From Octopus bimaculoides (lineage: Eukaryota), in the NCBI RefSeq assembly GCF_001194135.2, contig NC_068989.1:43113767-43169551 (forward strand): DNA of 55,785 nt, written 5' to 3'. Position 1 is the stretch's first letter. The number at the start of each line of letters is the position of its first letter. Below, piece after piece: positions 12,750 to 23,950 of the stretch. Both the position numbers and the translations under genes were made by a program. Below the pieces are notes generated by a model. It ran no database searches, had not been told where the DNA came from, and saw only the letters and a program-made list of their open reading frames with translations.

Positions 12750-13415
12750 TTTTTCAAGCATACGGGCATAGTCTGAAATTAAGGGAAGGCAGCTGCTGGG
12801 CTAAACTCTTTTAATATTCGACTGTTTCTTTATTTTAGCAATCTCGGATGGGTGACACGCAAAGCTGTCCTCGGTGGAATTTGAAATCAGAGCAAATACA
12901 GACGGAACAAATACCTCAAGGTATTTTGTGCGATGCTGTAACGATCTTGCTAATCCACTATCATAAATATATAATTAATAATTGCCTCAAATTTAGGCAC
13001 AAGGTCTGCAATTTTAAGGGGAGGGTTAGTTGATTACATGTATCTCAGTACATGACTGGTACTTTATTTTGTCTATCCCGGAAGAATGAAAGACAGAAAT
13101 GATCTCAATAGGATTTGAATTCAGTCGGAAATGATTCCCTAAACAAATTTTCGAGTGCTCCTTTGATCCTGCCAATCCATAGATCAAAATGTATATTTAA
13201 TAATCCTTTCTACTATATGCATAAGACCCGAAATATAGTGGGAGGAGGATAGTCAATTACATCAACCCCAGTGCTCAAATGCTACTTATTTTATCGACCA
13301 CGAAAGTATGACAGACAAAGTTGACGTAGGTGGAATTTGAACTCAAATCACAAAGCCAGAAGAAATATCGCTAAACATTTTTGTCCAGCGTCCAAACGAT
13401 TCTGCCATCCTACCG
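12750..13415 (-). mobile_element. Three head-to-tail diverged SINE family B copies (about 12750-12965, 12980-13170, 13210-13415)
   Basis: Each carries the reverse-complement B-box (GGAATTTGAA/GGATTTGAA) and the AAAG...GTCGA/TACTTTATTTT body. Confidence 0.75.
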
Positions 13416-19760: not shown

Positions 19761-19868
19761 CAGAAATATTCATGTATTTATAAAGAATAAAAAGTTTTGA
19801 ATGGTACAACAATGCACTATAATACAAAAAAATGGACTATATACTTGTAATTTAGTTATCTATAGTCC

Positions 19869-19903
19869 GATGATATTTCGGAATAAAATTCCTTCTTCAG
19901 ATC
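19869..19903 (-). ncRNA. Minimal type I hammerhead ribozyme candidate
   Basis: Minus strand GAT-CTGAAGA-A-GGAAT(TTT)ATTCC-GAA-ATAT-C-ATC: core, 5-bp stem II, palindromic stem III, 3-bp stem I. Confidence 0.6.
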
Positions 19904-21594: not shown

Positions 21595-21881
21595 GGGTAT
21601 TTGGCGCATGGTCGTGAGTTCGATACCTGCAGTGCGTTGAGTCCTTGAGCAAGACTTTTTATCTCACGTTTTTTCAGTCCGCTCAGCAAGCGAAAAAAAA
21701 TGAGTAGTACCTGCATTTCAAAGGGCTATCTTGTCACATTCTGTGTCACGCTGAATCTCCCTAGGAACAATGCTATGACCAAGCGTGTCTGCAAAGTGCT
21801 CAGTTACATGCACGTTACTTTCACGAGCAGGTTGTTCAGTTCATCGGATCAACTGGAACCGACTTGACCGACAGAGTGCCA
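21595..21881 (+). mobile_element. SINE family C, near full length
   Basis: GGTCGTGAGTTCGATACC B-box, GTCCTTGAGCAAGAC, and 3' end GGATCAACTGGAACC...CGACAGAGTGCCA; reverse 3' copy at 49888-50015. Confidence 0.85.
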
Positions 21882-21898
21882 TATAATATAAACATATA

Positions 21899-22290
21899 CA
21901 GGGTGCGGTGAATATATTGTCGTCTAAATTACGCAAAAATGACACTAACACAGACATCTCATTTTAACAGATATATTTACCAAAATTACATTAAAATATC
22001 TTGAAATACCAAACAGTAAATTTATTCAATAAATTCGTCATTGGCTTCAACCACAACCTCCAGGCGACTTCGGAATCTCCTGAATCTCTTCCAGACGGTC
22101 TCCTTGTTTAAGTTGGTGAATGCTGCCATAATCCTAGTCTGTGGTGATACAAGGAGTTTTGTTGGTATCTCTTTCAACCGCGCCCCACACATAATAATCA
22201 AAGGGGGTGCAGTCTGGAGAGTTAGGTGGCTAGATGTTAGGGGTGATGCGGTCGCAGAAATTGTCCAACAGCCATGACTGGAAATAATAC
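21899..22290 (-). mobile_element. Mariner/maT transposon 3' end with terminal TIR
   Basis: TA|CAGGGTGCGG terminus; minus-strand QSWLLDNFCDRITPNI*PPNSPDC...DYYVWGAVERDTNKTPC...FRSRLEVVVEANDEFIE*. Confidence 0.88.
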
Positions 22291-22394
22291 ATTTCTAAAT
22301 CTCTCAGAGAGATTTATGCAGTAGTAATACGATGAAGTAGTTGTATGCTGTCAACTTAATGTGACAGTCCCCTAAAGGGAATAATACTACTGAT

Positions 22395-22624
22395 ACTACT
22401 GTTGATTAGACCTAGGAAGCTGCACCGCTTCCTGTCGGCCTTGACAGATTTTCTGTCCTTATGTTTACTCCAGACTGAGGATGAGCAAAGACTCAGAAAC
22501 ATGTCTCTGGATGCAGGCTTAGCTGGGTGGAGGTGCTTGTCTCCCCCTTGTAAACATAAGGACACAGGAAATGTGTCGAGGCCGACAGGAAGGGTGCAGC
22601 TTCCAAGGTCTAACCAACAGTAGT
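22395..22624. repeat. Inverted repeat: arms of 74 and 75 nt with an 81-nt spacer
   Basis: 22395-22468 versus reverse complement of 22550-22624 differ by 5 substitutions and 2 small indels. Confidence 0.95.
22469..22511 (+). ncRNA. Type I hammerhead ribozyme (minimal, palindromic stem III); predicted cleavage after C22505
   Basis: TCCAGA-CTGAGGA-TGAG(CAAAGA)CTCA-GAA-ACATGT-C-TCTGGA: 6-bp stem I, CUGANGA core, 4-bp stem II, GAAA, GUC triplet. Confidence 0.85.
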
Positions 22625-22884
22625 CAGCGCATTAATAAAGAGTCATTCTTCATCACAAAATATAAACCCCTTTACAATGCATCCACCAAAAATGACTTTA
22701 CCACCAGAGGCTTAGAATAACACGCAAATATTAAAAACGATATATTCAAAAGAGTTACTTGACATAAATTTATTCAGAATAATTCCAACCGCTACTATTC
22801 CAACCACAACGGGTCACTTTTAGTTCACTTGACCATTTAAAAGGATTCCACCTTGAGCTAGCTGGCATTGTGCCAAAATTTGAA

Positions 22885-23052
22885 ATCACTATTCAGTCAT
22901 TTCTTTGCGTCTTCACGCTCTGAGTTCAAACTCAACCATGCCTTCATGCTTTTGGTGTCGATAAAATAAGTAGCAGTTGAGTCCCGAGGTCGATGTAATT
23001 GGTTTAACTCCTCTCCCGAACTTTCTAGCCTCGTGCCAATATTTGAGACCAA
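22885..23052 (+). mobile_element. SINE family B copy
   Basis: CTCTGAGTTCAAACTC...GTCGATAAAATAAG...GAGGTCGATGTAATT...CCTCGTGCCAATATTTGAGACC. Confidence 0.8.
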
Positions 23053-23353
23053 TATTTAATGACTTCTTATTTCACAGGGTCGATCTTGATTTTACTCGTC
23101 ACTCACAAGGATGTGGAATATGTATCCCTGCACACTGAGGTTGCTGAATCCTTCTTATTGTAATATCGCCACAAAAAATATTTTACGATTACTAACCTGG
23201 TACCATGAAGTATGCCGCATTGCTTCGTCTTCAATGTGACTTCAGTCAAAAACCAAAAGCCATCAGAGATCCCAATCTTCACAGTGAATTCAATACGAAC
23301 TATCCTAACATCCTTGGTATTGAATGAGGTTGTCATTTTCATCCTTTGACAAC

Positions 23354-23950
23354 TACGAAGATTCTTCTTCCTCTTCTTTGAGCGGTACATCGGGAAATCA
23401 GTAATCGCCAGTTACCATCGTCTCTGACCAACCTGTTTGCTTCTTCCTGGGAGATGTTCAGTCTGCGAAGATCTTTGAAGGTACTACGCTGTCTTCCTTG
23501 GCCGGCCTCTTTGTTACCTTCCACCAGCATCCAGCTCATAGCTGTTTTGGCAAGCCTCTCCTCTGGCAGATTTAATGTGTCCAGCCACTCTCATTCGTCG
23601 TTCGCTTACAATTGTATGCAAGGGTCTTTTTTATTGCTGCTTGGAGAATGGCTTCATTTGTTATTCTGCCTCGATAAGTGATTCGTAAGATTTTTCTGAG
23701 GCACCGCTGATGAAATACGTCGAGTCGGCGGGAGATTTCTCCTGTCATCTTCCAGATCTCAGCTGCATAGATCGCTATTGGCAGTATTGCTGTTTTGTAC
23801 AGACGAATCTTCAGCTCTATACTTATGTTATTGCTACACCAAAATGTTGTCAGTCTTCAAAATACTACGAAGATAGCGTCATCTGGCAAGGAAAGATGCG
23901 GAAAGATGGCCATTCCATCAATATTTTCCATATCTGTTTGTGGAGACTCA
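23354..23950 (-). mobile_element. RTE-clade LINE, 5'-truncated 3' fragment
   Basis: ISIELKIRLYKTAILPIAIYAAEIWKMT...LDVFHQRCLRKILRITYRGRITNEAIL...SERRMRVAGHI; GAA-rich tail. Confidence 0.9.

What the first reader, a model, noticed from the sequence alone, without database searches (positions are those of the whole stretch)
22469..22511. Intact minimal type I hammerhead ribozyme
Seen in the sequence: stem I TCCAGA/TCTGGA (6 bp, perfect), core CTGAGGA, stem II TGAG/CTCA with a CAAAGA loop, then GAA, the palindrome ACATGT and C (GUC triplet, predicted cut after 22505). All core positions are present. Established: minimal type I hammerheads with a short palindromic helix III are associated with Penelope-like elements and metazoan non-LTR retrozymes, and cleave as dimers that pair through the palindrome. 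Unusual here: the 10.1-11.1 pair is U-A, and no Penelope ORF is adjacent. Inference: a catalytically competent, possibly dimer-dependent self-cleaving RNA.
Basis: partly seen in the sequence, partly recalled or inferred. Interest (0 to 1): 0.9.

Follow-up and report, generated by a model that had tools for sequence, protein, structure and literature searches.

The report
Hammerhead ribozyme motif inside dispersed repeat
The 43-base sequence really carries every conserved letter of a small self-cutting RNA (a hammerhead ribozyme), but it is the centre of a worn copy of a hairpin-shaped repeat found thousands of times in this animal genome, a setting where such minimal hammerheads are already known, and no cutting has been shown.

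Summary
The motif at 22469-22511 is exactly as described, and chance would give about 0.002 such matches per window. It is not a unique locus. It is the unpaired centre of a damaged copy of a high-copy, palindromic dispersed repeat found in several related species. The family consensus is more canonical than this copy: CUGAUGA, against the window's private G7. The common family polymorphisms avoid all 12 invariant core letters. They fall on N7, loop II, helix I and helix III. Helix III changes from ACAUGU to ACUAGU by a linked double change that keeps the palindrome. These points favour a real, ancestral minimal type I hammerhead of the kind found in Penelope-like elements and amphibian satellites. 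Several points count against it. No Rfam hammerhead model matches, even at E<=10. Helix II has only 3-4 pairs and shows no covariation. The hammerhead fold is not the minimum-energy fold. RNA-seq shows no ends at the predicted cut. There is no tandem partner and no Penelope ORF in the window. Helix I covariation is shared by the whole hairpin, so it is not hammerhead-specific. Verdict: probably a new member of a known kind, with catalysis untested.

The parts
22469..22511 (+). Complete minimal type I hammerhead-like motif; predicted cut between C22505 and U22506
   Evidence: Sequence read. It is the only descriptor hit in the window, with 0.002 expected per shuffled window.
22469..22474 (+). 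Helix I, 5' strand (UCCAGA). 22474 is A in one subfamily and G in the other.
   Evidence: 22474 A>G in 54-60% of DNA reads. G22474, C22506 and A22510 form one linked haplotype.
22475..22481 (+). Core C3 U4 G5 A6 N7 G8 A9 (CUGAGGA here; CUGAUGA in about 95% of family copies)
   Evidence: 22479 G>T 94.7% and G>A 3.3%. No variant >=2% at the other six letters.
22482..22495 (+). Helix II hairpin: U-A plus GAG/CUC pairs with loop CAAAGA. In most copies 22482 is C, giving C opposite A at the base of the helix.
   Evidence: 22482 T>C 78-85%; 22495 A>T up to 8%; loop letters 22489-22491 are polymorphic; 22483 and 22485 G>A are uncompensated.
22496..22498 (+). Core G12 A13 A14
   Evidence: No family variant >=2%.
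22499..22504 (+). Helix III: A15.1-U16.1 closing the palindromic CAUG loop (ACAUGU), able to pair with a second copy in trans
   Evidence: 22501 A>T and 22502 T>A occur at equal frequency (14.8/14.9% and 5.7/5.9%), giving ACUAGU, which is also a palindrome. Single changes are absent.
22505..22505 (+). C17, the letter 5' of the predicted cleavage site
   Evidence: It is C>U in 3-11% of contig depth in three other species, which the GUH rule still allows.
22506..22511 (+). Helix I, 3' strand (UCUGGA; CCUGAA in the second subfamily)
   Evidence: 22506 T>C 48-53% and 22510 G>A 48-52%. They are linked with 22474.
22390..22468 (.). Left arm of the long hairpin in this copy
   Evidence: Inverted repeats I1-I3, folds and the arm alignment.
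22512..22549 (.). Inner part of the right arm with no partner in this copy. In other copies the partner sequence lies just left of 22466, so about 38 nt are missing from this copy's left arm.
   Evidence: In some searches the loose letters before 22466 read ...GACAGGCATCTTCAACTAGCAGGTCATGC. They fold onto 22512-22545.
22550..22628 (.). Right arm of the hairpin. It is truncated at about 22628 relative to the family, which continues as the reverse complement of about 22358-22392.
   Evidence: The loose letters after 22592 and 22577 read ...CTAAACAGCAGT and AACAGTAGTATTATTCCCTTCAGGGGACTG.
22282..22389 (.). Outer left part of the same repeat family. The left terminus is at about 22281/22282, and other copies have AT-rich or (TA)n flanks there.
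   Evidence: contig pieces cover 22281-22392, and the loose letters before 22281, 22333 and 22335 are AT-rich with low agreement.

Best explanation
The window holds a decayed copy of a high-copy, hairpin-shaped (palindromic) non-autonomous repeat. Its unique 46-nt centre encodes a minimal type I hammerhead of the kind carried by Penelope-like elements, animal retrozymes and amphibian satellites.

Transcribed in the + sense, the arms would form a long stem. The centre could then form a three-way junction:
- Helix I has 6 bp (4 bp plus a C.A mismatch in the second subfamily) and continues the stem.
- Helix II is short: GAG/CUC plus U-A here, or C.A in most copies.
- Helix III is one A-U pair capped by the palindromic loop CAUG.

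As in the newt and Penelope-type motifs, an active fold would need two molecules to pair through ACAUGU, and would cut after C22505.

What is shown: the motif itself; the repeat family and its copy number; that the master sequences kept the core while the other letters changed; that individual copies decay neutrally; and that transcripts of both orientations exist.

What is inferred: catalysis, dimer dependence and descent from a Penelope-like element. This copy has a truncated right arm, a 38-nt gap in its left arm and no partner motif nearby. It is most likely a fossil with little or no self-cleavage in vivo.
For: Motif and chance level.

High-copy family in several species. Thousands of contig pieces were laid, and depth over the arms reached about 3000-4000 reads from about 1% of one DNA run.

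The family consensus is CUGAUGA. All four letters are seen at N7, the one free core position.

None of the 15 positions variable at >=2% falls on the 12 invariant core letters. P is 0.002, or 0.009-0.05 if linked changes are counted once. By comparison, at least 24 of the 81 right-arm positions vary at >=4%.

Helix III changes ACAUGU to ACUAGU by a linked double change that keeps the palindrome. The 22500 C>U variant would still give a G.U pair.

C17>U in other species is allowed by the GUH rule.

Pair 1.1-2.1 switches from A-U to G-C as part of one linked haplotype.

The architecture matches published minimal type I motifs:
- a 6-bp helix I;
- a 1-bp helix III with a palindromic tetraloop (axolotl HHR_Amex1);
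- a mismatch at the base of helix II (HHR_Amex2 has U.U and still cleaves);
- an extra letter after A9, then G10.1-C11.1 (PMC4209133, PMC7229834).

Penelope-type insertions often carry an adjacent inverted truncated copy and prefer (TA)n targets (PMC8557442). Other copies here have AT-rich or (TA)n flanks.
Against: No Rfam hammerhead family matches at the gathering score or at E<=10 on 401 or 57 bases.

Helix II is only 3 bp plus C.A in most copies. It shows no compensatory change and carries two uncompensated G>A variants. Published Penelope-type minimal motifs have a long helix II of 6-8 bp.

The extra A opposite the extra letter after A9 is not a described feature.

The hammerhead fold is not the predicted minimum: -8.8 against -12.4 kcal/mol in this copy, and -6.3 against -9.1 in the consensus.

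RNA-seq reads run across 22505/22506 without a dip and without a pile-up of ends. The same was reported for a bona fide Penelope hammerhead (PMC11167929), so this is weak evidence.

The two arms co-vary between subfamilies along the whole hairpin, so helix I covariation says nothing specific about a ribozyme.

The window has no tandem copy, no second motif and no GIY-YIG/Penelope ORF.

No full family copy could be fetched. All family data are per-position frequencies from reads laid on this one copy.
Confidence: 0.6

Rival explanations
1. This is a chance look-alike. The repeat is a MITE- or foldback-type palindromic DNA element (or simply a source of hairpin RNA and small RNAs). The loop between its arms happens to contain CUGAUGA...GAAA...GUC. 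Helix I is just the innermost part of the inverted repeat, and nothing is cleaved.
For: The whole hairpin keeps its complementarity through changes on both arms, so helix I comes for free.

CUGA and UCAG inside the motif are themselves complementary, and they extend the hairpin in the minimum-energy fold.

Helix II is marginal and shows no covariation.

No Rfam hit was found, and RNA-seq shows no ends at the predicted site.

The descriptor rate of 0.002 per 55 kb means tens of chance hits per gigabase.

Flanks of other copies are AT-rich or TA-rich, which also fits TA-targeting DNA transposons.
Against: Given a closing stem, a 46-nt loop would still need 6 + 4 fixed core letters in register, U-H at the right place, a helix II and a 6-nt palindrome.

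Family polymorphisms avoid the 12 core letters, and N7 varies.

The palindrome is preserved by a linked double change.

In typical copies helix I is separated from the rest of the stem by an asymmetric internal loop. It is therefore not simply the continued palindrome.
Confidence: 0.3
2. It is a monomer of an animal non-LTR retrozyme. The family would be transcribed from tandem arrays, cut at each hammerhead, ligated into roughly 300-500 nt highly self-paired circular RNAs, and copied back into the genome.
For: Retrozymes carry type I hammerheads, have low GC content, have 170-450 bp units and fold into highly self-paired RNAs. They are reported in crustaceans, insects and other invertebrates (PMC7229834). 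Dispersed monomers also exist (bioRxiv 10.64898/2026.07.22.740005). The element here is strongly self-paired and is transcribed.
Against: The window has no tandem copy. Family copies have fixed outer ends at about 22281 (and about 22334 in other species), flanked by unrelated AT-rich DNA. Their ends are neither at the cleavage site nor permuted. No read joint of head-to-tail type was seen around the motif. The loop 1-loop 2 contacts of canonical retrozyme hammerheads cannot be recognised.
Confidence: 0.05

Closest known systems
Minimal hammerheads (min-HHRs) of Penelope-like elements (Cervera & De la Pena 2014, PMC4209133)
   Same: Both are type I with a complete core and a helix I of 4-6 bp. 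Both have a letter between A9 and the G-C pair that starts helix II, and a palindromic 15.2-16.2 / loop 3 that allows dimers. Both are widespread as single motifs in invertebrate genomes, show strong sequence heterogeneity within a genome, and have low expected activity.
   Different: Helix II here has 3-4 bp instead of 6-8. The extra letter after A9 faces an extra A on the other strand (C.A, or U-A in this copy). No Penelope ORF or pseudo-LTR could be linked to it. The motif sits at the exact centre of a long palindromic element.
Newt satellite 2 / axolotl HHR_Amex1 and HHR_Amex2 in non-LTR retrozymes (PMC7229834)
   Same: Helix III is a single base pair capped by a palindromic tetraloop, as in Amex1. 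The base of helix II is weak or mismatched, as with the U.U of Amex2. Both would be poor cutters as monomers and efficient as dimers.
   Different: The amphibian motifs lie in 330-350 bp tandem repeats and keep loop 1-loop 2 contacts. Here the copies are dispersed and single, and helix I runs into a long stem.
Rfam hammerhead models (Hammerhead_1 RF00163 and relatives)
   Same: The core letters and the three-helix topology are shared.
   Different: No match at E<=10. The near-absent helix III and short helix II fall outside those models.
Palindromic MITE / foldback repeats and inverted Penelope insertion structures (PMC8557442)
   Same: The element has long inverted arms, thousands of dispersed copies, AT-rich or (TA)n insertion sites, and variable 5' starts.
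   Different: Those elements are not defined by a conserved unique centre that carries a full ribozyme core.

Membership tests
Hammerhead ribozyme (general) | Conserved core C3 U4 G5 A6 N7 G8 A9 ... G12 A13 A14, A15.1-U16.1, H17 | tested here: met
   All letters are present in the window copy. All are present in the family majority, with no variant >=2% at any of the 12 fixed letters.
Hammerhead ribozyme (general) | Three helices around the core, supported by covariation | tested here: inconclusive
   Helix I: the A-U to G-C switch is linked, but the whole hairpin co-varies. Helix II: no compensatory change and two uncompensated variants. Helix III: the palindrome is kept by one linked double change. 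No real alignment of copies could be built.
Hammerhead ribozyme (general) | Site-specific self-cleavage after H17 | not testable with these tools
   RNA-seq shows no excess of ends at 22505/22506. Standard libraries also fail to show this for a proven Penelope motif (PMC11167929).
Rfam Hammerhead_1 / HH9 / HH10 / II / 3 | Covariance-model score at or near the gathering threshold | tested here: not met
   No hammerhead family is listed at the gathering score or at E<=10 on 401 and 57 bases.
Type I topology | Helix I open; helices II and III closed by loops | tested here: met
   The order is helix I 5' strand, CUGANGA, helix II hairpin, GAA, helix III, C, helix I 3' strand.
Penelope-type min-HHR (PMC4209133) | A letter between A9 and 10.1, followed by a conserved G10.1-C11.1 pair | tested here: inconclusive
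   C/U22482 can be read as the extra letter, followed by G22483-C22494. An extra A22495 then has to be accepted on the 3' side.
Penelope-type min-HHR (PMC4209133) | Palindromic 15.2-16.2 / loop 3 allowing a dimeric helix III | tested here: met
   ACAUGU, with the variant ACUAGU in 6-15% of copies.
Penelope-type min-HHR (PMC4209133) | Long helix II (6-8 bp) | tested here: not met
   3 bp plus U-A in this copy, or plus C.A in the majority.
Penelope-type min-HHR (PMC4209133) | Location in the pseudo-LTR of an element encoding RT plus GIY-YIG | tested here: inconclusive
   The RT-like ORFs in the window gave only a weak RVT_1 hit and a DDE_3 hit, and no GIY-YIG. The rest of the genome could not be searched.
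Animal non-LTR retrozyme (PMC7229834) | Head-to-tail tandem repeats of 150-450 bp, each with a hammerhead | tested here: not met
   No tandem array at the locus, no second copy in the window, and family ends flanked by unrelated DNA.
Animal non-LTR retrozyme (PMC7229834) | Circular RNA products | not tested
   No back-joined reads appeared. However, the window copy lacks the outer right arm, so such joints could not have been laid.

The most novel reading that the evidence does not exclude
The family could be an undescribed kind of palindromic, non-autonomous hammerhead element. It would form a roughly 450-500 nt hairpin whose arm pairing is kept by compensatory changes between subfamilies, with a minimal hammerhead placed exactly at the apex. 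Cleavage would then open the loop and turn a hairpin transcript into a two-stranded RNA with free ends. That product could feed small-RNA production or serve as a priming structure for reverse transcription. The helix II junction (C.A or U-A inserted between the core and the G-C pair) would be a new variant.
Probability: 0.1. Interest if true: 0.6.

Novelty: new member of a known kind. Interest (0 to 1): 0.3.

Why it matters
If the motif cleaves, it adds one more repeat family to the very large set of minimal type I hammerheads in invertebrate genomes. It would also show such a motif at the apex of a long palindromic element rather than in a tandem repeat or a pseudo-LTR. That bears on the open question of what hammerheads do for Penelope-like elements and their non-autonomous derivatives. 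For genome annotation, the practical points are these. The hit is a decaying repeat copy, not a host ribozyme gene. Standard Rfam scans miss this class. The apparent perfection of helix II in this copy comes from an ordinary C-to-T change.

Tried and rejected
Rfam scans of the whole window at gathering score and of 401 and 57 bases at E<=10 listed no hammerhead family, only noise matches to ZFAT-AS1_2, mir-920 and SNORD44.

A search for a second copy in the window by blastn found none.

Attempts to fetch real family copies all failed, so no true alignment, R-scape-type test or custom covariance model was possible:
- exact-pattern scans of viral, metagenome and prokaryotic genome collections, using an arm anchor and a degenerate motif pattern, gave 0 hits;
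- a protein-database search with the pseudo-ORF across the element gave 0 hits. The third search was not spent, because two of the three open consensus frames were already covered.

Contig-based variant tables proved blind within about 31-34 nt of an alignment end. They therefore say nothing about 22466-22499. Raw reads were used instead.

The partner of 22510, letter 22470, could not be read because it lies 4 nt from the point where family reads stop matching this copy. The depth profile suggests it is mostly uncompensated.

An apparent direct repeat flanking the region (21880-22030 against 22654-22776) was only short AT-rich matches and was dropped.

Identifying the organism through the Tc1 transposase remnant gave only scattered arthropod and other matches.

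A tRNA-derived SINE origin was considered, but the window has no tRNA-like sequence.

The other CUGANGA...GAAA strings at 39122 and 19857 lack helices I and III.

Full report
**1. The observation.**
The sequence at 22469-22511 reads TCCAGA CTGAGGA TGAG CAAAGA CTCA GAA ACATGT C TCTGGA.
- a perfect 6-bp helix I;
- the core CUGANGA with G at the free position 7;
- a 4-bp helix II with a 6-nt loop;
- GAA;
- a 6-nt palindrome that begins with A15.1 and ends with U16.1;
- C17, so the predicted cut is 22505/22506.

I wrote a relaxed descriptor of a type I hammerhead. It is the only hit in the window on either strand. In 1500 dinucleotide-preserving shuffles of the window it gave 3 hits (0.002 per window). 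At the scale of a gigabase genome the same rate predicts tens of chance matches, so further evidence is needed.

**2. Standard family tests.**
Rfam release 15 gives no match in the whole window at gathering scores. No hammerhead family appears at E<=10 when only 401 bases or 57 bases are searched. By nearest-neighbour energies the hammerhead fold of the 43-mer is -8.8 kcal/mol. An alternative in which CUGAG pairs with CUCAG and simply lengthens helix I is -12.4. These rules do not score the tertiary core, so this is a caution and not a refutation.

**3. The surroundings.**
The window is eukaryotic, about 35% GC and full of microsatellites and transposon remnants. The motif sits at the top of a long imperfect hairpin. 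The arms are 22395-22468 and 22550-22624, the energy is -148 kcal/mol and z = -15.6, and either strand folds equally well. There is no second copy in the window and no tandem array.

**4. It is a repeat.**
Public reads and contigs were laid on 22200-22800. The stretch 22281-22624 belongs to a very abundant dispersed family. Thousands of contig pieces per run matched at 80-99% identity in at least four differently labelled organisms. Depth reached about 3000-4000 reads over the arms from only about 1% of one DNA run. RNA reads of both orientations cover it.

Family pieces stop matching this copy at 22466 and at 22592. The letters that other copies carry left of 22466 are ...GACAGGCATCTTCAACTAGCAGGTCATGC. 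They are the pairing partner of 22512-22545. Right of 22592 the family continues, and further on it becomes the reverse complement of about 22358-22392.

So the full element is a long palindrome. Its left end is at about 22281, and I estimate a length of about 450-500 bp. Its unique centre is 22466-22511, which is the hammerhead-like motif. The window copy lacks about 38 nt of the left arm and the outer right arm. Flanks of other copies are AT-rich or (TA)n and disagree with one another, as expected for dispersed insertions.

**5. What the family says about the motif.**
The following frequencies come from raw DNA reads.

| Position | Role | Change | Frequency |
|---|---|---|---|
| 22479 | N7 | G>T; A 3.3%; C also seen | T 94.7% |
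| 22482 | base of helix II, 5' side | T>C | 78-85% |
| 22495 | base of helix II, 3' side | A>T | up to 8% |
| 22489, 22490, 22491 | loop II | polymorphic | 2-20% |
| 22483, 22485 | helix II | G>A, uncompensated | 3-6% |
| 22501 and 22502 | helix III | A>T and T>A | 14.8/14.9%, 5.7/5.9% |
| 22474 | helix I, pair 1.1-2.1 | A>G | 54-60% |
| 22506 | helix I, pair 1.1-2.1 | T>C | 48-53% |
| 22510 | helix I | G>A | 48-52% |

- **N7.** The family consensus is the canonical CUGAUGA. The window's G is a rare private state at the one core position that is free to vary.
- **Base of helix II.** Most copies have C opposite A. The window's U-A pair is the minority state. The C lies in a CpG, so the T here looks like ordinary CpG decay and not a designed pair.
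- **Helix III.** The two changes have equal frequencies, and single changes are absent when only near-identical reads are kept. They are therefore linked. They turn ACAUGU into ACUAGU, which is again a palindrome.
- **Helix I.** In reads at >=93% identity, the variant letters G22474, C22506 and A22510 all fall below 1.5%. About 26% would be expected if they were independent. They form one haplotype in which pair 1.1-2.1 switches from A-U to G-C. The partner of 22510, letter 22470, appears mostly unchanged, leaving a C.A mismatch and a 4-bp helix I in that subfamily.

None of the 15 positions variable at >=2% within 22469-22511 is one of the 12 invariant core letters. P is 0.002, or 0.009-0.05 if linked changes count as single events. 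For comparison, at least 24 of the 81 right-arm positions vary at >=4%. Within the near-identical subset, rare variants (1-3%) do hit core letters about as often as other letters. Individual copies are therefore decaying neutrally. The constraint is visible only at the level of the sequences that founded subfamilies. In other species C17 is U in 3-11% of contig depth, which the GUH rule allows.

**6. A caveat on helix I.**
Single-contig flanks let me pair left-arm and right-arm variants. The left flank from a second-subfamily contig pairs almost perfectly with the second-subfamily right arm (-49.3 kcal/mol). The first-subfamily flanks pair best with the first-subfamily arm. The whole hairpin therefore keeps its complementarity through changes on both arms. 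That could come from selection on an RNA or DNA hairpin, or from the way the palindrome is made. Helix I covariation is part of that pattern and is not specific evidence for a ribozyme. In typical copies helix I is set off from the rest of the stem by an asymmetric internal loop, which is about where natural type I motifs make loop contacts. That reading is inference only.

**7. RNA evidence.**
In three RNA-seq runs (depth about 100-230 over the site) reads cross 22505/22506 without a dip. No excess of starts or ends is flagged. Both orientations are about equally represented, which suggests passive read-through transcription. This argues against efficient cleavage of the bulk transcripts. It is weak evidence, because the same negative result was reported for a bona fide Penelope hammerhead (PMC11167929).

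**8. Comparison with what is known.**
Cervera and De la Pena (PMC4209133) describe minimal type I hammerheads in Penelope-like elements and as thousands of single motifs in invertebrate genomes, shrimps and insects included. Their features are:
- a helix I of 4-6 bp;
- a letter between A9 and 10.1;
- a conserved G10.1-C11.1 pair;
- a palindromic 15.2-16.2 / loop 3;
- dimeric action with low activity in vitro.

The axolotl HHR_Amex1 has a 1-bp helix III capped by a palindromic tetraloop. HHR_Amex2 has a U.U mismatch at the base of helix II and still cleaves, efficiently so as a dimer (PMC7229834). Penelope insertions often carry an adjacent inverted truncated copy and prefer (TA)n targets (PMC8557442).

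The present motif shares the core, the type I topology, helix I, the 1-bp palindromic helix III and a weak helix II base. It differs in several ways:
- Helix II is very short: 3-4 bp, against 6-8 in the Penelope motifs.
- An extra A faces the extra letter after A9.
- It lies at the exact centre of a palindromic element.
- It has no demonstrable link to a Penelope ORF. The RT-like ORFs in the window gave only a weak RVT_1 hit and a Tc1-type DDE_3 hit, and no GIY-YIG.
- It fails the retrozyme criterion of tandem repeats.

**9. Verdict.**
The most likely reading (about 0.6) is a real, ancestral minimal type I hammerhead carried by a high-copy palindromic non-autonomous repeat. The window holds a damaged copy with little or no activity, and any activity would depend on pairing with a second molecule through ACAUGU. 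The main rival (about 0.3) is a chance look-alike in the loop of a MITE- or foldback-type hairpin. A retrozyme reading is unlikely (about 0.05). Its interpretation is partly supported: the motif and its class are plausible, but 'intact' and 'catalytically competent' are unproven, and the features it called unusual are ordinary decay in a repeat copy. It is at most a new member of a known kind, and interest is modest.

**10. Limits.**
The organism is hidden, and I could not retrieve any other full copy. All family data are per-position frequencies of reads laid on this one copy. Linkage is inferred from equal frequencies and from identity filtering. The arm-pairing result rests on three single contigs and consensus flanks.

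Noticed in passing
28706-28931, 50107-50323, 52241-52401, 40732-40857, 11421-11552, 13251-13380, 41232-41351, 51541-51721, 22939-23007, 13028-13124: A 130-230 bp dispersed repeat, SINE-like in size, occurs at least ten times in the window at 69-82% identity. One fragment lies about 300 bp downstream of the hairpin element. ARAGORN finds no tRNA-like sequence in the window.
   Followed up: partly
22208-22281: This stretch is a piece of a different high-copy repeat. In other copies it continues after 22281 as GTTCTCCTGCTTGTGTGGCATGGTGCAGAG, so the hairpin element abuts or interrupts it here.
   Followed up: partly
1086-1833, 3714-3765, 5315-5643, 8046-8750, 30963-31166, 34593-34989, 36314-36936, 39314-39534, 43389-43800, 45046-45726: There are ten runs of N, each next to a microsatellite. 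These are assembly gaps or masked simple repeats. They create the long artefactual ORFs in the ORF list.
   Followed up: no
32844-33894 (-): A Tc1/mariner transposase remnant (Pfam DDE_3, E = 1.7e-14). It is 63-80% identical over the matched part to the best transposase matches in the protein database, nearly all of them unnamed.
   Followed up: partly
5800-7915 (-), 23342-23856 (-), 49263-49556 (+), 29628-30203 (+): These are fragments of reverse-transcriptase-like ORFs. Three look like non-LTR (LINE) elements and one looks like an LTR-type RT. Only one piece reaches a weak RVT_1 hit, and no GIY-YIG domain was seen.
   Followed up: partly
39122-39165 (+) and 19857-19900 (-): Two other CUGANGA...GAAA strings have a plausible helix II (for example CTGATGAAGAGCTCCGCTCGAAAC). 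Neither has a helix I or helix III, and neither passes the descriptor.
   Followed up: yes
22296-22316 and 22347-22368: Small local palindromes (ATCTCTCAGAGAGAT and GCTGTCA...TGACAG) lie inside the outer left part of the repeat. The stretch 22347-22367 has the highest read depth of the whole region.
   Followed up: no
26678-27108 and 37343-38469: There is a long purine-rich (AGG)n / GAAGAAGGAGGAGGA tract and a 1.1-kb degenerate (CA)n tract. They account for the strong strand skews in the composition profile.
   Followed up: no
22500 (RNA reads only): Among near-identical RNA reads, 22500 C>A reaches about 20-40% in two of the three runs but is under 1% in DNA reads. One or a few strongly expressed copies probably carry a broken helix III palindrome (AAAUGU).
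   Followed up: no
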